From the sequence record NC_048046.1: a stretch of 64,000 nucleotides of DNA; one strand, given 5' to 3'. Numbering within the stretch: the stretch's first letter is position 1; every line of letters starts with the position of its first letter. The translations under genes and the position numbers were made by a program. The notes under the pieces are model-generated. The model ran no database searches. It saw only the letters and a program-made list of their open reading frames with translations, and had not been told where the DNA came from. Below are positions 4,797-10,930 of this stretch, in pieces.

Positions 4797-5204
4797 ATGC
4801 CCCTCTCCGAAGAAGAAGCGCTTCTCATCCGCGACGGCGACATCGTGCTCGTGCCGATCAAGGTCATGCGCTCAAACAATCACTTCGATCGTGACGGCGT
4901 CTCGCTCCGGGTTCAGTCCCCACAGATTCTTCACGGACGCGATGAGATCGAGAAGGGTCAGCCGGAGTTCAGCATCAAGACCTCTCAGGTCCACAGCATC
5001 GCTGCTATGCCGTTGCGCCTGAAGGATCACGTGAAGTGGGATGCGTCCGGACCGGGCGCCGAGTACATGCCGGAGACCGGCGTGGTCGTCCACATCGACG
5101 GCGACGACATCACCGTGAAGCAGGACAAGGAGCGCACGCCGCGAAATCGCGTGATTCTTCGACGTGCGCTCACTCGTTACAACCCTAAACTCAAAGAGGC
5201 ATGA
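4797..5204 (+). CDS. hypothetical protein
   Basis: follows promoter; overlaps next start. Confidence 0.7.
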   Translation: MPLSEEEALLIRDGDIVLVPIKVMRSNNHFDRDGVSLRVQSPQILHGRDEIEKGQPEFSIKTSQVHSIAAMPLRLKDHVKWDASGPGAEYMPETGVVVHIDGDDITVKQDKERTPRNRVILRRALTRYNPKLKEA

Positions 5205-5788
5205 TGACCTCCTCCAAACCCGCGACGCACCGCGTCATCAGCATCCTCAGCCGTGTGATCTTCGAGACCCGCTGGCTGCTGGTCCCGATCTATCTGGCGA
5301 TGATCATCGCCATCGCCGCCTACGTGATCCTGTTCACGAAGCAGGCGATCGATATGGGCCTGGGCGTGTGGCATTGGGATGCGGAGCACTTGCTGCTCGC
5401 CTCCCTGGCTCTCGTCGACATGTCGATGGTCGCCAACCTGATCGTCATGATCCTGGCCGGCGGCTTCTCGACCTTCGTCGCCGAGTTCGACCAGAGCCTG
5501 TTCCCAAATCGCCCGCGCTGGATGAACGGCCTCGACAGCACCACGCTGAAGATTCAGATGGGCAAGTCGCTGATCGGCGTCACGTCGGTTCACCTTCTCC
5601 AGACGTTCATGCGCCTGCATGACATTCTGAAGGAAGAGAACGGGCTGGTTCTCGTGATCGCCGAGATCGCGATCCACATGGTCTTCATCGTGACGACCGT
5701 CAGCTACTGCTACATCTCCAAGCTCACCCACGGCCACAAGGTCGCGCCGGCTGCCCTGCCGACGCCGGCCACTGCGGAAGGACACTGA
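5201..5788 (+). CDS. UPF0114/YqhA (TIGR00645-like) membrane protein
   Basis: SRVIFETRWLLVPIYL, LVDMSMVANLIVM, LKIQMGKSLIGVTSVHLL; 3-4 TMs. Confidence 0.85.
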   Translation: MMTSSKPATHRVISILSRVIFETRWLLVPIYLAMIIAIAAYVILFTKQAIDMGLGVWHWDAEHLLLASLALVDMSMVANLIVMILAGGFSTFVAEFDQSLFPNRPRWMNGLDSTTLKIQMGKSLIGVTSVHLLQTFMRLHDILKEENGLVLVIAEIAIHMVFIVTTVSYCYISKLTHGHKVAPAALPTPATAEGH

Positions 5789-5791
5789 ACC

Positions 5792-6322
5792 ATGAAGCTC
5801 CTGCGAGCTATCCTCCTCGGCGCGACCGCCGGCCTATTGGTCGCCGGCCCGCTCGCCCTCTCGGGCTGTACGGACCCCGCCGCCCGCCATCACGTCGTGC
5901 GCGGCAAGCACAAGGTCCACAAGCTGTCCGACGGCCGTTACGCCTTCCAGGGTAACGACGGCGTCTGGTACTGGTACATCTACAGCGCCAGCAACTCGGC
6001 GCGCCTGGAAGACGGCACGCTTTCCATGCCGGGCTCCTGGACCGCCGGCGGCGAGCCGGATGCCAGCGATCTCGCGGCCGGGTTCGACTTCGATTTCGAT
6101 ATCCCGACCCTGGACGGTGGCGCCCCGATCTCCGAATCGCAAGCGGCTTCGATCGAGAACGGCGCCGCTGAAGCGACTTCGGAAGCCGGCGGGGGCATGT
6201 CGGACACTTCGTCGGGTCCCTCGGACTCGTCCCCGTCAGTCGACTCCAGCGTCGATTCGGGCGGCGGCGGTGACTCCGGTGGTGGCGGGGGCGATGGCGG
6301 CGGTGGTGGTGACGGGGGCTGA
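5792..6322 (+). CDS. lipoprotein with acidic Ser/Gly-rich tail
   Basis: lipobox LSGC; tail DSGGGGDSGGGGGDGGGGGDGG. Confidence 0.75.
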   Translation: MKLLRAILLGATAGLLVAGPLALSGCTDPAARHHVVRGKHKVHKLSDGRYAFQGNDGVWYWYIYSASNSARLEDGTLSMPGSWTAGGEPDASDLAAGFDFDFDIPTLDGGAPISESQAASIENGAAEATSEAGGGMSDTSSGPSDSSPSVDSSVDSGGGGDSGGGGGDGGGGGDGG

Positions 6323-6324
6323 TC

Positions 6325-6885
6325 ATGGGTCAGTACATCTGGCATGATCTGCCGCTCGACGAGCGGCTGAGCAAGCCCAAGGTCGATGATCGTCCTGGAG
6401 CCCGGTTGAAGGCGGAGGATGCCCGAGGGCTCCTCCATTTCCCGGATCGCCTAGGCGATCTCCTGACCCTCAAGGCCTGTCTCGCCGGCGCCAAGATCGT
6501 TTTCAGTGGAAACGGCTATGCGCCGTCGGTGACGGCCTGGGGCTGGACGCCGCGCGACCAAGAGGTCATCGAAGACTACGTCAAGCGCCGTGTCGAAAAG
6601 AACATGGGTGGCCTGACCGCACGTCAAGGCCTCGTGCTCCTCGCAGTCCGCAATGACGGCAGCGTCGATGTTGCGACCTGGGGCAAGTCGTCCCAGGACT
6701 GCAAGGTGCTCGGCGAACTCGGTAGTAAGGAATTGGGCGCGCTGCCATCGTGCCCCTTCCAGACTTGGTGGGGCTGGGGTAACGGGGGCGTACCCAAGCG
6801 TTTCCCGGCGCAGACCCTCAAGACGCTGTCCGAGAACACCCAGGCCTACGTCAAGAAGAACACGCACCCCGGCGCCGTCGGCTGA
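6325..6885 (+). CDS. hypothetical protein
   Basis: translationally coupled ORF. Confidence 0.7.
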   Translation: MGQYIWHDLPLDERLSKPKVDDRPGARLKAEDARGLLHFPDRLGDLLTLKACLAGAKIVFSGNGYAPSVTAWGWTPRDQEVIEDYVKRRVEKNMGGLTARQGLVLLAVRNDGSVDVATWGKSSQDCKVLGELGSKELGALPSCPFQTWWGWGNGGVPKRFPAQTLKTLSENTQAYVKKNTHPGAVG

Positions 6886-7247
6886 TGGACGGTTTCGCGT
6901 ACTCCTGCCCAGACTGTGGTGAAGGGTTTCCTAGCCGCTACAGTCTGGGTCAGCATCTGAAGGCCGCGCATCCCGTCGTGCCTCAGGTCTTGAACATCCG
7001 CGACTATCCTGAAGGCCTGCCGCCTAACTCGACTTATGTCGGACGAGGCACGTTCGCTGGAAATCCCTATCGCATTGGTATCGAAGGGACGCGAGATGAG
7101 GTCATCAACCATTATGAGAATACGCGCGAACTGGATAAAGCCTTCGTAGCCAGGGTGCGTAAAGAACTGCGCGGCCGGCATCTCGTATGTCACTGCGCGC
7201 CTGAGCGGTGTCATGCCGACTGGCTGCTCAAGATCGCCAACAGCTAA
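6885..7247 (+). CDS. C2H2 zinc finger + DUF4326-like domain
   Basis: CPDCGEGFPSRYSLGQHLKAAH; YVGRGTFAGNPY...LRGRHLVCHCAPERCHADWL. Confidence 0.82.
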   Translation: MDGFAYSCPDCGEGFPSRYSLGQHLKAAHPVVPQVLNIRDYPEGLPPNSTYVGRGTFAGNPYRIGIEGTRDEVINHYENTRELDKAFVARVRKELRGRHLVCHCAPERCHADWLLKIANS

Positions 7248-7301
7248 GCCCTTGCTTTCGCGAGAAATCATCGTTATCCATGTGGCGGGTTTGAGGCCAG
7301 A

Positions 7302-7320
7302 TTAGGGCTTCATTAACCAT
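7302..7320 (+). promoter_or_regulatory. CtrA-like binding site upstream of hfa-like operon
   Basis: TTAG-N7-TTAA-CCAT, near match to TTAA-N7-TTAA. Confidence 0.55.
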
Positions 7321-7430
7321 GTGGCTGAAAAATAACGATAAATCTTGAACCCGAAAGTTGACAAACGCCGTAATCTCGAAGATGAAGGCGTCAAGTTCAA
7401 CTTCAAACGCGAAAGGGGAGTCCTCACCAC

Positions 7431-7922
7431 ATGAAGCTCAAGATCATCGCCATGGCTGGCATGCTCGCCGGCGTCGCTATCGCCGGCGCGGCCTGCGCCC
7501 AAGCGGTCGGGGAGGACTCCACCTGGAAATTCCGCACCCCGTCCGAGAACGTCATCCTCCAGCAGAACCTGGACAAGATCGACCTCCAGAAGGCCGGCTA
7601 CTACGACAAGCTGAAGAACGGCGCCTACGGCCTGGGCGGAGGTGCTGGCGCGGCCGGCGGCCTGCTCGGTGGCGGCGCCTCGACGATCAGCAACTACTAC
7701 TCGATCACCAACCAGACCACGAACAACTGCTCGTCGTCCGGTTCGGTCGGCTCGCCGATCTCCTGCGGCTCCGGCTCGATCACGAGCAGCGGCGTTTCGC
7801 AGTCGACGGTCGGCTCGTCCCTGGACTCGAACACCGCGCTGACGGGTAACACCGTCACCAGCACGGGCAACAAGACTCAGGTCGGCGGCACCATCAACAA
7901 CAATCAGCAGCCGCAGCAGTAG
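7431..7922 (+). CDS. secreted G/S/T/N-rich protein, HfaA/curlin-like by position
   Basis: signal peptide; low-complexity amyloid-like composition; first gene before hfaB-like. Confidence 0.65.
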   Translation: MKLKIIAMAGMLAGVAIAGAACAQAVGEDSTWKFRTPSENVILQQNLDKIDLQKAGYYDKLKNGAYGLGGGAGAAGGLLGGGASTISNYYSITNQTTNNCSSSGSVGSPISCGSGSITSSGVSQSTVGSSLDSNTALTGNTVTSTGNKTQVGGTINNNQQPQQ

Positions 7923-7931
7923 GGGGCGAAT

Positions 7932-8777
7932 TTGAACCGCAAGGTCTACATCCGCGCCGCTCTTGCGGTGGCGCTGCTGGCTTCGGCCGCCGCTATGCCG
8001 GCCCAAGCCGCTTCCAAGAAGAAGCCGATCGCCACGAACCTCGGCAGCACGCCGACCGTCAACGCCGATCCGCTGGCCGCAGGCTTCACCTGCACGAGCC
8101 AACTCACGGCCCAGGCCGCACGTCCGCTCCGTATCGCCGTTGGCAAGGTCGGCGACTTCACCGGCAAGTTCTCGAATGAAGCCTCCGAAGGCGGCTTCCG
8201 TGTGACACAGGGCGGCGCCCTGATGATCTCCAGCGCCCTGGGTAAGCTGGCCAACGTCGACCAAGTCGAACGTCTGGACACGCAGGTCGCCGATATCGAC
8301 ACGCTGCTGGCGAAGTCCCAACTGCTGCGTGATGGTGACGCCCTGCGTGGTCTGACCGCCGGTCAGTACGATGGCTCCGACTACTACATCATCGGCGGCA
8401 TCACCGAGGTGAACTACAACATCCGCTCGGGCGGCGGCAAAGTCGGCGTCTCGAACATCTACGGCGGCAAACGCACGTACACCATGAACGTCGCGGCCGA
8501 CCTGAAGATCGTCGAAACCAAGTCGCTGAAGGTCGTCAAGACCATCAGCGTTCAGAAGCAGATCACGGGCTACGAGAACACGTTCGGCCTGTTCACCTTC
8601 AAGGGCGACTATCTCTTCGACCTGGACTTCGGGTCGAAGGGGCAGGAGCCGCTCCAACTCGGGGTTCGCTCCGTCCTGGAGTACGGCACCCTGGAACTCA
8701 TCTCGGCGGTGGCGCCGAACCGCGACTACTACGCCGCGACCTGCCGCCCCTACGCCGAGGCGATGTTCGGGAAGTAA
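7932..8777 (+). CDS. hfaB: HfaB/CsgG-family secretion pore
   Basis: RIAVGKVGDFTGK, RVTQGGALM, VERLDT, GSDYYIIGGITEVNYNIRSG, ISVQKQITG, EPLQLGVR match remembered Caulobacter HfaB. Confidence 0.88.
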   Translation: MNRKVYIRAALAVALLASAAAMPAQAASKKKPIATNLGSTPTVNADPLAAGFTCTSQLTAQAARPLRIAVGKVGDFTGKFSNEASEGGFRVTQGGALMISSALGKLANVDQVERLDTQVADIDTLLAKSQLLRDGDALRGLTAGQYDGSDYYIIGGITEVNYNIRSGGGKVGVSNIYGGKRTYTMNVAADLKIVETKSLKVVKTISVQKQITGYENTFGLFTFKGDYLFDLDFGSKGQEPLQLGVRSVLEYGTLELISAVAPNRDYYAATCRPYAEAMFGK

Positions 8778-8854
8778 AGGGGAGGGGCAACCCAACCTGA
8801 CAGCGTTTGGTGCGGACGCTGGTTTCTCCCCGCACTTTTCCCTGAAACAAAACG

Positions 8855-9796
8855 ATGAAGGACCCTATGCGCAAGCTCATCCTCGCTACCGCCTCCCTGG
8901 CGGCTCTGTTCGCGGCCTCGTCCGCGTTTGCCGGCAACATCACCACCGGCGTGAATGGCTTCAACCAGAACAACACCACCCCGCAACTGTCGGGCACCCT
9001 GCTGACCAACATCAAGGTCGGCGACAAGATCGACGCCTCGGCCGCCGCTGTCGGCAACAACCTGAGCCTCGAAGCCAACGGCAACATCACCATCTCGGCC
9101 GGCAACCTGGACCAGCAGAACAGCGGCCTGCAAGTCGGCGCCCTGATCGTGAACGACTCGAAGCTGAACAAGGGCTCGCTGGAAGCCAAGGCCATCGGCA
9201 ACTCGATCTCCCTGAAGGCCGGCGGCACCGTCGACGGCGGCAACAACGGCATCGAGCAGATCAACAGCGGCCCGCAGATCGGCGCCCTGGTCGTGAATGA
9301 CGTGAAGGCTTCGGGCAACATCGACGCTTCGGCCGTGGCCGTCGGCAACGCCGTCTCGGTCGACGCTGGTACCGACTTCTCCGTCTACGGCGGCGGCTTC
9401 GATCGCCAGACCAACTCGGCCCTGCAAGTCGGCGTCGCCCTGGTGAACGATTCGAAGTTCGGCGGCAAGCTGGACGTCCTGGCCCAAGCCGTCGGCAACA
9501 GCCTGTCGACCGACACCTCGACCACGACCCTGCAATGGTCGCAGCGCAACACCGCGCCGCAGTTCGCCCTGGCCGCCGTCACCGACGTCAAGGCCTCGGG
9601 CAACACCTCGATCTCGTCGGTCGCCGCCGGCAACCTGATCAACGTCTCGACCAACTCGATCGGCCAGACCGCGATCTTCCAGACCAACTTCGCGCCGCAA
9701 GTCGCCGCCACGTACATCGCCGGCAGCAACTTCTCGGCCGACCTGACCGCCGGCTCGACCGCGATCGGCAACTCGGTGAGCGTCAAGGCCCACTAA
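8855..9796 (+). CDS. HfaD-like secreted beta-solenoid/amyloid-like repeat protein
   Basis: signal peptide; repeated A-x-A-[VI]-GN-S and Q-x-N-x-x-x-Q units; follows hfaB-like. Confidence 0.7.
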   Translation: MKDPMRKLILATASLAALFAASSAFAGNITTGVNGFNQNNTTPQLSGTLLTNIKVGDKIDASAAAVGNNLSLEANGNITISAGNLDQQNSGLQVGALIVNDSKLNKGSLEAKAIGNSISLKAGGTVDGGNNGIEQINSGPQIGALVVNDVKASGNIDASAVAVGNAVSVDAGTDFSVYGGGFDRQTNSALQVGVALVNDSKFGGKLDVLAQAVGNSLSTDTSTTTLQWSQRNTAPQFALAAVTDVKASGNTSISSVAAGNLINVSTNSIGQTAIFQTNFAPQVAATYIAGSNFSADLTAGSTAIGNSVSVKAH

Positions 9797-9829
9797 GCCT
9801 TCGATCTGAACTGAGATACTGGAATACGG

Positions 9830-9861
9830 AAAGCCCGGCGCGTGCGCCGGGCTTTTCTTTT
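9830..9861 (+). terminator. Rho-independent terminator
   Basis: AAAGCCCGGCGC-GT-GCGCCGGGCTTT followed by TCTTTT. Confidence 0.9.
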
Positions 9862-9876
9862 ACCTGACACCAAGTG

Positions 9877-9907
9877 TTGACAGCCGGCGCCGGGCCAGTC
9901 TAAAACC
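9877..9907 (+). promoter_or_regulatory. class A phage promoter
   Basis: GTTGACAGCCGG...TCTAAAAC. Confidence 0.7.
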
Positions 9908-9932: not shown

Positions 9933-10616
9933 GTGACCAAGAAGAGCCGATACATCGCTCCAGCGCTCGCGCAGGACGTCCTGGAGAACAGTCGTTTCTT
10001 CGGTGAAGATGCGGTCTTCCAGGGCACGTTCTTCGAGGGCGACGAACGCCTGCTGATCATTGTGGGCGAGAACGCGTCGGGCAAAAGCCTGCTCTTCCGC
10101 GTCCTCGCGGCCTGGGCCAAGAAAGACCACAAGGTCACCGGGATCACCATCTCAATCCGGGAGCGCACCGATAGCTCGGTACCCTTCCGCCGGATGTTCA
10201 TGTTCGGCGAAGAGAGCGAGAAGTCCACCGGCGCCAACTCCTTCCAGGTGATCGAGTCTGGCTTCAAGAACGCTGAGAGCGGCGGTCACGGCCAGACGCT
10301 CCTCATGCTGGACGAGCCCGAGATTGGCCTGTCTGACGGCTATGCTCGTGCGCTCGGTGAGTATCTCGGGCAGCGTGCTCTGACACTCACTGATTCCTGT
10401 CAGGGGTTGGTCGTTGTGACGCACAGCCATAGCCTCGTGCGGGGCGTACTCGCCGGGCTCAAGGCGAAGCCCGCCTTCGTGCATGTCGGCCCTAAGCCGA
10501 AGGCTCTGGATCAGTGGGTCGATGAGCCCGAGCACCGCACGGTCGAAGACCTCACTAAACTCGGCGATGTCGCCCTGGAACGCTGGCGAGCGATCCAGAA
10601 ACTCATGAAGGACTGA
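9933..10616 (+). CDS. stand-alone ABC-type P-loop ATPase
   Basis: Walker A GENASGKS, Walker B LLMLDEPE, H-loop VVVTHS. Confidence 0.8.
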   Translation: MTKKSRYIAPALAQDVLENSRFFGEDAVFQGTFFEGDERLLIIVGENASGKSLLFRVLAAWAKKDHKVTGITISIRERTDSSVPFRRMFMFGEESEKSTGANSFQVIESGFKNAESGGHGQTLLMLDEPEIGLSDGYARALGEYLGQRALTLTDSCQGLVVVTHSHSLVRGVLAGLKAKPAFVHVGPKPKALDQWVDEPEHRTVEDLTKLGDVALERWRAIQKLMKD

Positions 10617-10618
10617 CC

Positions 10619-10930
10619 ATGAAGCGCCTGATCCTCGCGGCTGCGGCCGTCCTTTCCATGTCCGCCTGCACCAAGGGCGACCTGATCGTCTCTAATCAGG
10701 AAGCGGTCGCCGCAGTGCGCCTGCTGGGCGTCAAGGACGTCGTGCTCGAACGACCGCAATTCAACTGCGACGCCTACGGTGATCAGCCGCGTGTTTCGCC
10801 GACCCCTGGTGCGTCGTATCTTCAGAATGGCTACTTCTTTCGAGGCATGCAGAACGGCAAGCCCGTGAAGGGCGCCGTCTGCGTCGGCTACGGCCGCACG
10901 CCGCGTGTCCAGGTTAACGGCATCCAATGA
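10619..10930 (+). CDS. lipoprotein
   Basis: lipobox MSAC after hydrophobic leader. Confidence 0.75.
   Translation: MKRLILAAAAVLSMSACTKGDLIVSNQEAVAAVRLLGVKDVVLERPQFNCDAYGDQPRVSPTPGASYLQNGYFFRGMQNGKPVKGAVCVGYGRTPRVQVNGIQ

What the first reader, a model, noticed from the sequence alone, without database searches (positions are those of the whole stretch)
7431..9861. Phage-encoded holdfast-anchor / curli-like export operon
Seen: three consecutive signal-peptide genes with their own upstream region and a strong terminator. They encode a G/S/T/N-rich 163-aa protein, a 281-aa protein with HfaB/CsgG motifs, and a 313-aa protein of AxA[VI]GN and QxNxxxQ repeats. The 281-aa protein has an AQA cleavage site and no lipobox Cys in its leader. 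Known: Caulobacter hfaA-hfaB-hfaD anchors the holdfast, and CsgG pores secrete curli amyloid. Inference: the phage makes the infected cell export its own surface fibre or anchor, which could change adhesion, hide receptors (superinfection exclusion) or aggregate cells. Homologs may already be annotated in Caulobacter giant phages, but I know of no functional description.
Basis: partly seen in the sequence, partly recalled or inferred. Interest (0 to 1): 0.85.

Follow-up and report, generated by a model that had tools for sequence, protein, structure and literature searches.

The report
Phage-encoded holdfast-anchor-like export cassette
Caulobacter phage CcrPW carries a self-contained three-gene cassette resembling the bacterial holdfast-anchor operon (a CsgG-type outer-membrane channel flanked by two secreted, beta-rich proteins), so infected cells probably display a phage-made surface fibre or anchor, but nobody knows what for.

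Summary
Window 7431-9861 belongs to Caulobacter phage CcrPW (gp250-gp252) and contains three co-oriented genes with Sec-type leaders. They have their own 183-nt promoter spacer and a strong terminator.

- **gp251** is a CsgG/HfaB-family protein. It scores above Pfam's CsgG cut-off, and NCBIfam HfaB is its best hit at 207 bits, below the 300-bit equivalog cut-off. Its AlphaFold model matches CsgG structures at E 8e-15.
- **gp252** consists of six ~48-residue beta repeats and links to the HfaD family only by weak and transitive evidence.
- **gp250** is homologous to the small proteins encoded upstream of hfaB-like genes, but no named HfaA was recovered.

The same trio, each with its own terminator, recurs in CcrColossus, five Brevundimonas giant phages and several uncultured phage-like contigs. 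It is under purifying selection (dN/dS 0.01-0.14) and lies far from the virion and lysis modules.

The middle gene was already annotated (CsgG-like in 2012, hfaB in 2018), but the held literature does not discuss the trio. Phage curli pores are a published precedent in marine myophages.

The best reading is a phage-borne Hfa-type (type VIII-like) secretion-assembly module that remodels the infected cell surface. Export, assembly and biological role are inferred, not shown.

The parts
7248..7430 (+). Promoter/leader spacer of the cassette (183 nt). It holds the -35-like GTTGACA at 7357-7363, upstream blocks TTAACCAT (7313-7320) and CTGAAAAATAA (7325-7335), and a GGGGA ribosome-binding site at about 7415-7419.
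   Evidence: Sequence read. GTTGACA is enriched in the window and strand-biased. The blocks TTAAC.AT, CTGAAAA.TAA and GTTGACA are conserved at the same offsets in the diverged phage contig L019. Function as a promoter is inferred.
7431..7922 (+). gp250: 163-aa secreted protein in the hfaA position. It has a Sec leader (about residues 1-25), a conserved N-terminal motif block (about residues 27-63), a G-rich linker, an invariant Cys pair (C100/C112) and a G/S/T/N-rich tail.
   Evidence: hhalign against proteins encoded upstream of cellular hfaB-like genes: 97.9%, E 5e-13. Against the first gene of the L022 trio: 99.85%, E 1e-30. dN/dS 0.014 versus CcrColossus.
7932..8777 (+). gp251: 281-aa CsgG/HfaB-family outer-membrane channel subunit, with an AxA-type leader (about residues 1-26) and no lipobox Cys.
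   Evidence: Pfam CsgG 51.6 bits versus cut-off 20.8. NCBIfam HfaB 207.5 bits, E 2e-61, covering 4-259 of 264 profile positions. phmmer to E. coli CsgG structures E 6e-6. AlphaFold model pLDDT 80, Foldseek CsgG E 7.7e-15, TM up to 0.73. dN/dS 0.031.
8867..9796 (+). gp252: 309-aa secreted all-beta repeat protein in the hfaD position. It has a leader (about residues 1-22) and six tandem repeat units (five of 45-50 aa, the last 38 aa), each with Q-x-N-x-x-x-Q and [AS]-x-A-x-G-N.
   Evidence: AlphaFold pLDDT 86, pTM 0.84, all strands. NCBIfam HfaD E 6e-5, and 1.3e-7 for phage orthologs. hhalign 97.8%, E 1e-12 to the L022 protein that carries a Pfam PF27277 HfaD hit. dN/dS 0.14.
9828..9863 (+). Intrinsic terminator closing the cassette (13-bp GC-rich stem, 4-nt loop, T-run). 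The next GTTGACA promoter element follows at 9876-9882.
   Evidence: CcrColossus annotates a terminator here. Equivalent hairpin plus T-run, followed by a GTTGAC element, lies after the third gene in all other phage cassettes examined.

Best explanation
The cassette is a phage-borne, self-sufficient Hfa-type (type VIII-secretion-like) export and assembly module.

The proposed mechanism has four steps:
1. The cassette is transcribed as one unit from its own promoter to its own terminator during infection.
2. All three products cross the inner membrane through Sec.
3. gp251 oligomerises into a CsgG-like beta-barrel channel in the outer membrane.
4. gp250 (HfaA-position protein) and gp252 (HfaD-like beta-repeat protein) pass through the channel and assemble on the cell surface into a stable beta-rich, possibly amyloid-like structure.

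The net effect would be that the infected Caulobacter cell acquires a phage-specified surface fibre or anchor. The most plausible uses are altering polar adhesion or holdfast retention, or masking or occupying the pole where the phage's receptors sit.

What is shown: gene structure, family and fold of gp251, homology of the flanking proteins to partners of hfaB-like genes, conservation as a unit, and purifying selection. What is inferred: co-transcription, Sec export, ring formation, secretion of gp250 and gp252, polymerisation, and any benefit to the phage.
For: - Identity of the channel: Pfam CsgG above cut-off, and HfaB the best NCBIfam model over its full length. gp251 aligns directly to E. 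coli CsgG structures. The model matches CsgG at E 8e-15 and fits the membrane-bound form (4uv3, rmsd 4.0) better than the pre-pore form (4uv2, rmsd 6.5-9). Long hairpin strands are present where CsgG has its transmembrane hairpins.
- Partners: gp250 and gp252 are homologous to the genes flanking hfaB-like genes in L003 and L022. The L022 third gene has an unmarked Pfam HfaD hit. The NCBIfam HfaD model is the only meaningful hit for gp252 and its orthologs.
- All three proteins have Sec-type leaders.
- Unit character: own promoter element and terminator, and the same trio plus terminator in CcrColossus, five Brevundimonas giant phages and contigs L019, L020, L021 and L023.
- Selection: dN/dS 0.014, 0.031 and 0.14.
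- Literature: host HfaB is required to bring HfaA and HfaD to the surface, where they form SDS-resistant multimers (PMC6707917; bioRxiv 10.1101/2022.07.20.500906).
- Position: more than 100 genes away from the structural, lysis and replication modules mapped in CcrColossus.
Against: - gp251 lacks the lipoprotein Cys that host HfaB and CsgG have. The only non-lipidated CsgG structure in the PDB is titled a soluble 'pre-pore' form, so outer-membrane insertion is not assured.
- gp251 and gp252 score below the NCBIfam equivalog cut-offs (207 of 300, and 22.5 of 100).
- No named HfaA was found among relatives of gp250.
- gp252's model has no significant structural neighbour. Its hhalign scores may be inflated by repeats and composition.
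- There are no expression, localisation or oligomer data.
- The host's own Hfa sequences could not be fetched for a direct comparison.
Confidence: 0.6

Rival explanations
1. Interference with, or hijacking of, the host's own holdfast anchor. The non-lipidated gp251 and its partners would mix with or compete against host HfaB, HfaA and HfaD. The effect would be altered holdfast anchoring in the infected cell (shedding and detachment, or premature fixation), not an independent structure.
For: - The cultured phages that carry the Hfa-type trio infect Caulobacter or Brevundimonas. The held literature describes hfa genes as conserved across Caulobacterales.
- gp251 lacks the lipid anchor that most relatives have, while a 93%-identical relative keeps it.
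- The phage proteins are diverged from the curated Hfa equivalogs but clearly related to them.
Against: - The phage carries all three components, which a simple poison would not need.
- Brevundimonas-phage orthologs keep a lipobox-like Cys, so loss of lipidation is not a general feature of the phage cassette.
- A relative without the Cys occurs on a contig of about 500 kb beside a confident HfaD-family gene, which suggests that unlipidated forms can work normally.
- Compatibility with the host proteins could not be assessed.
Confidence: 0.15
2. An outer-membrane pore used for lysis timing or envelope permeabilisation, as has been proposed for the CsgG/CsgF pores of Melnitz and the pelagimyophages. 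On this view the flanking proteins are accessories.
For: Published hypothesis for phage CsgGF pores (PMC9004378). gp251 has the CsgG pore fold.
Against: - CcrColossus has a canonical endolysin, holin and spanin cassette about 100 genes away.
- There is no CsgF homolog.
- gp251 is only about 25% identical to the marine phage CsgGs.
- Two conserved secreted partner proteins under purifying selection point to a substrate-exporting system.
Confidence: 0.07
3. Virion or adsorption-related structural proteins. gp252 would be a beta-helical fibre or decoration protein of the particle.
For: gp252 is an all-beta repeat protein, and its weak fold hits are beta-helices that include phage tailspikes.
Against: - All three proteins have cleavable Sec-type leaders, and gp252 sits next to a CsgG-type secretion channel.
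- No fold hit is significant (best E 0.026 in the PDB, 0.001 in BFVD, TM about 0.1).
- The cassette lies outside the structural module.
- None of the eight conserved virion proteins listed for phiCbK-like phages maps here.
- phiCbK and most relatives lack the cassette.
Confidence: 0.03
4. A functionless passenger: a recently captured bacterial operon with no role in infection.
For: Patchy distribution within the subfamily, and location in the variable right arm of the genome.
Against: - Conserved as an intact trio with its own terminator across phage lineages only 37-73% identical.
- Strong purifying selection between CcrPW and CcrColossus.
- Not close to any cellular sequence found (53% identity or less in genomes), so not a recent capture.
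Confidence: 0.03

Closest known systems
Caulobacter crescentus holdfast anchor operon hfaA-hfaB-hfaD
   Same: - Same gene order and size classes: small secreted protein, about 280-aa CsgG-like channel, 300-400-aa secreted protein.
- HfaB is the best curated model for gp251 over its full length.
- HfaD is the only curated model that hits gp252 and its orthologs.
- The host system secretes HfaA and HfaD through HfaB to form stable surface multimers.
   Different: - The cassette is encoded by a phage.
- Scores fall below the equivalog cut-offs (207 of 300, and 22.5 of 100).
- gp251 lacks the lipoprotein Cys that host HfaB has.
- No named HfaA was retrieved for gp250.
- No HfaE-like gene was seen nearby.
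- A direct alignment to the host proteins could not be made with the tools.
Curli (type VIII) secretion system of E. coli: CsgG channel with CsgA/CsgB substrates and CsgE/CsgF accessories
   Same: gp251 has the CsgG fold and passes Pfam's CsgG threshold. gp252 is a Q/N-containing tandem beta-repeat protein, as functional amyloid subunits are.
   Different: - gp251 is about 20% identical to CsgG.
- There are no CsgE or CsgF homologs.
- gp250 and gp252 have no Curlin-repeat hit and no profile similarity to curlin-repeat proteins.
- The repeat unit is about 48 residues.
- There is no lipid anchor.
Phage-encoded curli pores of pelagimyophage HTVC008M and Methylophilales phage Melnitz (csgF-csgG plus curlin-repeat genes)
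   Same: A CsgG-family channel gene carried by a lytic phage, with secreted repeat-protein genes next to it. The function is unknown, and hypotheses already exist in print: sibling capture, uptake, lysis timing.
   Different: - A different branch of the family (25% identity, outgroup).
- The marine modules have CsgF, which this one lacks.
- The marine hosts lack curli genes. Here, host Caulobacter has its own hfa operon, and hfa genes are described as conserved across Caulobacterales, the order that includes Brevundimonas.
- The partner proteins are unrelated.
Cellular CsgG/HfaB-family loci in alphaproteobacterial MAGs (for example Stellaceae L003, and Sphingomonadales-type HfaB-OmpA fusions L004-L009)
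   Same: - 42-58% identity to gp251.
- An upstream gene shares gp250's N-terminal motif block.
- L003 also has a gp252-like downstream gene.
   Different: - Most are lipoproteins, and many carry a C-terminal OmpA peptidoglycan-binding domain.
- The Sphingomonadales-type loci have an unrelated downstream gene.

Membership tests
CsgG family (Pfam PF03783) | Sequence match above Pfam's gathering threshold | tested here: met
   gp251 scores 51.6 bits against cut-off 20.8, covering residues 59-260 and 3-201 of 210 profile positions.
CsgG family (Pfam PF03783) | CsgG protomer fold, including the two long beta-hairpins that form the barrel | tested here: met
   The AlphaFold model (pLDDT 80) matches 6l7a, 4uv3 and 6si7 at E 1e-13 to 8e-15, TM 0.62-0.73. 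Strands 151-195 and 201-238 are present.
CsgG family (Pfam PF03783) | N-terminal lipoprotein signal (lipobox Cys) | tested here: not met
   gp251 has no Cys before residue 54 and the leader ends A-Q-A. 101 of 120 relatives have a lipobox-like Cys. CcrColossus has an identical leader.
CsgG family (Pfam PF03783) | Oligomeric (nonameric) ring forming an outer-membrane channel | not testable with these tools
   No multimer prediction or experimental data were available.
HfaB (NCBIfam NF037935, equivalog) | Score at or above the curated equivalog cut-off of 300 bits | tested here: not met
   207.5 bits, E 2e-61, full-length coverage. Phage orthologs score 165-236 bits. HfaB is the best model by far (CsgG equivalog 24 bits), but below cut-off.
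HfaB (NCBIfam NF037935, equivalog) | Operon context between an hfaA-like and an hfaD-like gene | tested here: met
   The order gp250-gp251-gp252 is conserved in ten phage or phage-like loci and in L003 and L022.
HfaD (NCBIfam NF037936, Pfam PF27277) | Match to the curated HfaD model above cut-off | tested here: not met
   gp252 scores 22.5 bits, E 6e-5, against cut-off 100. Orthologs reach 31 bits, E 1.3e-7. PF27277 is absent from the local Pfam copy. Precomputed PF27277 hits are 'weak' on the L019 ortholog and unmarked on the L022 relative.
HfaD (NCBIfam NF037936, Pfam PF27277) | Homology to a protein that Pfam assigns to the HfaD family | tested here: met
   hhalign of the gp252 family against the L022 third gene: 97.8%, E 1e-12, 354 columns. 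Repeats and composition may inflate this score.
HfaA | Detectable sequence relationship to a protein named HfaA | tested here: inconclusive
   - No Pfam or NCBIfam hit.
- The exhaustive profile search found 35 clusters. The 30 looked up are all unnamed or 'hypothetical protein'.
- Homology is shown only to the small proteins upstream of hfaB-like genes.
- The host HfaA sequence could not be fetched.
Curlin subunits CsgA/CsgB (Pfam Curlin_rpt) | Curlin repeat match | tested here: not met
   - No Curlin_rpt hit at E up to 1 for gp250, gp252 or their orthologs.
- No PDB sequence hit with profiles.
- No profile similarity to phage curlin-repeat proteins.
- CsgA and FapC appear only as non-significant fold hits.
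Phage CsgF-CsgG curli-pore module (HTVC008M, Melnitz) | CsgF gene adjacent to csgG | tested here: not met
   The gene upstream of gp251 (gp250) has no CsgF hit. The marine modules annotate CsgF directly upstream.
Known anti-phage defence or exclusion systems (PADLOC) | Match to a defence-system protein model | tested here: not met
   No PADLOC hit for gp250, gp251 or gp252 at E up to 0.01.

The most novel reading that the evidence does not exclude
Giant phages of holdfast-forming Caulobacterales carry their own diverged holdfast-anchor machinery in order to take control of the infected cell's adhesive pole. They might glue or release the cell, shield the polar receptor site against further phage adsorption, or trap neighbouring swarmer cells ('sibling capture') with a phage-made amyloid-like fibre. 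The unlipidated channel of the Colossusvirus lineage would be an adaptation for acting together with, or against, the host's HfaB.
Probability: 0.2. Interest if true: 0.8.

Novelty: new variant of a known kind. Interest (0 to 1): 0.55.

Why it matters
If the cassette works as inferred, a lytic phage reprograms the surface and adhesion apparatus of a model bacterium with its own copy of a secretion-assembly system. That would be a clear case of a structural, non-metabolic auxiliary module. It would also place the unresolved question of why some phages carry curli-type pores in the best-studied host for polar adhesion, where imaging and biochemical methods for Hfa proteins already exist. In addition, it supplies a compact, diverged Hfa/CsgG trio, including naturally unlipidated channels, for comparative structural work on how this channel family reaches the outer membrane and what its HfaA-like and HfaD-like substrates look like.

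Tried and rejected
**Host Hfa sequences.** A direct comparison with the host's HfaA, HfaB and HfaD was not possible.
- The single genome-collection scan returned only MAG relatives.
- The plasmid collection holds no curated hfa locus.
- The primary paper, Hardy et al. 2010, is not held.

**HfaA link for gp250.**
- The word-based search gave 7 hits.
- The exhaustive profile search gave 35 clusters, none with an informative name.

**gp252.**
- The word-based search gave 2 hits.
- Profile searches against PDB sequences gave nothing.
- Foldseek against the PDB and BFVD gave no significant match. I therefore reject both 'curlin' and 'tailspike' as family assignments.

**Other libraries.**
- PF27277 (HfaD) is missing from the local Pfam copy.
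- PHROGs places gp251 in an unnamed family, phrog_20175.
- PADLOC gave nothing.
- IMG/VR returned only CcrPW and CcrColossus themselves.

**CtrA control.** The 8-mer at 7313-7320 is the only copy in the window, but 31 of 100 shuffles have at least one. No full TTAA-N7-TTAA site exists in the window. I keep CtrA control only as a lead. The block is conserved in L019 with one change.

**dN/dS against L019.** Synonymous sites are near saturation, so I do not use those values.

**Lipoprotein label for the gp250 ortholog.** The 'putative lipoprotein' label in CcrColossus (LipoP) is rejected, because the leader Cys is not conserved in the family.

Full report
**What the region is.** Window 7300-9900 is 100% identical to Caulobacter phage CcrPW (MH588545.1, a 308-kb member of Dolichocephalovirinae, genus Colossusvirus) and 96% identical to CcrColossus. 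The three ORFs of the finding are the deposited genes gp250, gp251 and gp252, equivalent to CcrColossus gp241-243. Existing labels are as follows.
- gp250 ortholog in CcrColossus: 'putative lipoprotein' (basis: LipoP).
- gp252: 'hypothetical'.

The genome paper for CcrColossus never discusses these genes. Full-text searches found no paper that links hfa genes or holdfast with these phages.

**Checking the observation.** The ORFs, leaders, composition, repeats and terminator are all present.
- The third protein starts at 8867, giving 309 aa. The ATG at 8855 lies in the ribosome-binding site and is ACG in CcrColossus.
- gp252 has six tandem units. Five are 45-50 residues and the last is shorter. 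Each carries Q-x-N-x-x-x-Q and [AS]-x-A-x-G-N.
- gp250 is 46% G/S/T/N, rising to 63% in its C-terminal 99 residues.
- gp251's leader ends A-Q-A and has no Cys before residue 54.
- The terminator at 9828-9857 is the only terminator-like site in 3.4 kb.

**The promoter region.** The 183-nt upstream spacer contains GTTGACA at 7357-7363. This heptamer occurs 19 times in the window against 5.9 expected. Eighteen copies are on the coding strand. The six plus-strand copies that fall within the annotated stretch lie in, or at the edge of, intergenic spacers upstream of start codons. It is therefore the phage's common -35-type element.

The cassette's copy keeps the -35 part, but the sequence where other copies have a CTAA-like -10 deviates. 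The spacer is also unusually long, and it holds two blocks (TTAAC.AT and CTGAAAA.TAA) conserved at the same offsets in the diverged phage contig L019. That suggests an extra regulatory input. A CtrA link is only a lead.

**The channel protein, gp251.**
- It passes Pfam's CsgG threshold (51.6 against 20.8 bits).
- Its best curated model is NCBIfam HfaB (207.5 bits, E 2e-61, full length), far ahead of the CsgG equivalog (24 bits) but below the 300-bit equivalog cut-off.
- It aligns directly to E. coli CsgG structures (E 6e-6).
- An AlphaFold model from a 50-sequence alignment (pLDDT 80, pTM 0.72) matches CsgG chains at E 8e-15 to 1e-12, with TM up to 0.73. The fit is better to the membrane-bound form than to the non-lipidated pre-pore form.

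Oligomerisation could not be tested.

**The missing lipobox.** Of 120 relatives, 101 have a lipobox-like Cys.
- gp251, CcrColossus gp242 and several close relatives (P0003, P0004, P0006-P0008) have A-x-A leaders instead.
- The 93%-identical P0002 and the Brevundimonas-phage orthologs keep the Cys.
- A Cys-less relative, P0029, occurs on a contig of about 500 kb next to a confident HfaD-family gene.

Host HfaB is described as a lipoprotein. So the feature is real and evolutionarily labile, but not unique to this phage.

**The flanking proteins.** gp250's family (nine aligned sequences) shares a leader, a conserved block around E-D-S-x-W-x-F, a G-rich linker, an invariant Cys pair and an S/T/N-rich tail. 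The Cys in the CcrPW leader is not conserved, which argues against the 'lipoprotein' label.
- tblastn and hhalign show that the N-terminal block is homologous to proteins encoded immediately upstream of cellular hfaB-like genes (97.9%, E 5e-13).
- The whole protein is homologous to the first gene of the L022 trio (99.85%, E 1e-30).
- An exhaustive profile search of 1.84 billion representative proteins found only 35 clusters. The 30 I looked up are all unnamed or 'hypothetical'.
- 'HfaA' is therefore a positional and family-context assignment, not a demonstrated membership.

gp252 and its orthologs hit only the NCBIfam HfaD model (E 6e-5, and 1.3e-7 for the Brevundimonas-type orthologs over most of the profile), well below cut-off.
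- The L019 ortholog has a weak precomputed hit to Pfam PF27277 (HfaD), and the third gene of L022 has a confident one.
- The gp252 family matches that protein at 97.8% (E 1e-12, 354 columns). It matches the L003 downstream gene at 97.1%.
- Repeat composition may inflate these values.
- The AlphaFold model of gp252 is confident (pLDDT 86, pTM 0.84) and all-beta, but has no significant neighbour in the PDB or BFVD. The weak hits are beta-helices and solenoids, including FapC and a CsgA.
- There is no curlin-repeat signal by HMM, PDB profile search or comparison with the curlin-repeat proteins of marine phages.

**Distribution and selection.**
- The same trio occurs in CcrColossus. It also occurs in Brevundimonas phage Kabachok (read in full), in four sister Brevundimonas phages that share the channel gene, and in the phage-like contigs L019, L020, L021 and L023.
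- Where I read the flanks (CcrPW, CcrColossus, Kabachok, L019-L021), the trio ends in a hairpin plus T-run terminator followed by a new GTTGAC element.
- phiCbK and the other Caulobacter giant phages lack it, so it is an accessory cassette.
- In CcrColossus it lies about 100 genes from the structural (gp38-125), lysis (gp134-137) and replication (gp140-179) modules.
- CcrPW against CcrColossus gives dN/dS of 0.014, 0.031 and 0.14.
- The nearest cellular relatives found are 53% identical or less.
- In a neighbour-joining tree without support values, most phage copies group with unnamed metagenomic sequences. Short cellular forms are sister to them. OmpA-fused cellular forms make a separate clade, and the marine phage CsgGs are the outgroup.
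- This does not look like a recent capture from the host.

**Mechanism.** According to the literature read here, host HfaB is a CsgG-like lipoprotein needed to bring HfaA and HfaD to the surface, where they form heat- and SDS-resistant multimers that hold the holdfast. By homology and context, the phage trio most likely works the same way:
1. Sec export of all three products.
2. A gp251 channel in the outer membrane.
3. Secretion and surface assembly of gp250 and gp252.

Everything after 'gene structure, family, fold, conservation' is inference. The main molecular doubt is how an unlipidated gp251 reaches the outer membrane. This also motivates the chief rival, that the phage proteins act on or with the host's own anchor. 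The lysis-pore idea published for Melnitz, a virion role, and a functionless passenger are each less likely, for the reasons given under the rivals.

**Novelty and score.** A CsgG-like gene in these phages has been annotated since 2012, and phage curli pores are in print, so the finding is not categorically new. Four things appear undescribed:
- The gene is part of a complete, conserved hfaA/hfaB/hfaD-like trio.
- The trio is an autonomous transcription unit.
- All cultured phages found to carry the Hfa-type trio infect Caulobacter or Brevundimonas (Caulobacterales). Host Caulobacter has its own hfa operon.
- The Colossusvirus channel has lost its lipid anchor.

I rate it a new variant of a known kind, with interest 0.55.

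Noticed in passing
window, 19 sites (for example 47, 1564, 4739, 7357, 9876, 11803, 14314): GTTGACA is about three-fold enriched (19 observed against 5.9 expected), and 18 of 19 copies are on the coding strand. The six copies within the annotated stretch lie in or at the edge of intergenic spacers upstream of start codons. The extended context is conserved (AGA-GTTGACA-G.CG.C, then a CTAA-like element about 17 nt later). This is probably the phage's main promoter class.
   Followed up: partly
window 7302-7430, minus strand: CcrPW annotates a 42-aa antisense gene ('gp249c') inside the cassette's promoter spacer. CcrColossus, whose spacer differs at only two bases, does not annotate it. It overlaps the conserved promoter blocks and is probably not a gene.
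   Followed up: partly
window 7313-7335: Two sequence blocks upstream of the -35 element (TTAACCAT and CTGAAAAATAA) are conserved at the same offsets in the diverged phage contig L019. They resemble a regulator-binding site. The first block resembles a CtrA half-site, but it is not statistically enriched.
   Followed up: partly
window 6885-7247: gp248 combines an N-terminal C2H2 zinc finger with a DUF4326 domain. A DUF4326 gene also sits directly upstream of the cassette in L019, so the neighbourhood is partly conserved.
   Followed up: partly
window 9933-10616: gp253, the first gene after the terminator, is a small AAA/ABC-type ATPase with weak similarity to the ATPase components of defence systems (ATPase-Toprim, AriA, PtuA, E 1e-7 to 1e-3). 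A faint AAA_21 gene occupies a nearby, not adjacent, position downstream of the cassette in L019.
   Followed up: partly
window 5792-6322 and 10619-10930: Two further small envelope proteins flank the region. gp246 has a lipobox leader (LSGC) and a poly-Gly/Asp/Ser tail. gp254 has a lipobox-like leader (MSAC). gp245 (5201-5788) is a UPF0114 membrane protein. This part of the genome is rich in envelope-targeted products.
   Followed up: no
loci L004-L009 (Sphingomonadales-type MAG contigs): The cellular relatives have a different architecture. It consists of a 230-250-aa protein sharing only gp250's N-terminal motif block, an HfaB-like lipoprotein fused to a C-terminal OmpA peptidoglycan-binding domain, and an unrelated 400-aa downstream gene.
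   Followed up: partly
protein P0002 against window 7932-8010: A metagenomic relative 93% identical to gp251 keeps a lipobox-like Cys exactly where CcrPW and CcrColossus have Ala. Lipidation was therefore lost or gained very recently within this lineage.
   Followed up: partly
window 8855 against 8867: The longest-ORF start for the third gene (8855) lies within the ribosome-binding site and is not an ATG in CcrColossus. The real start is 8867, giving 309 aa.
   Followed up: yes
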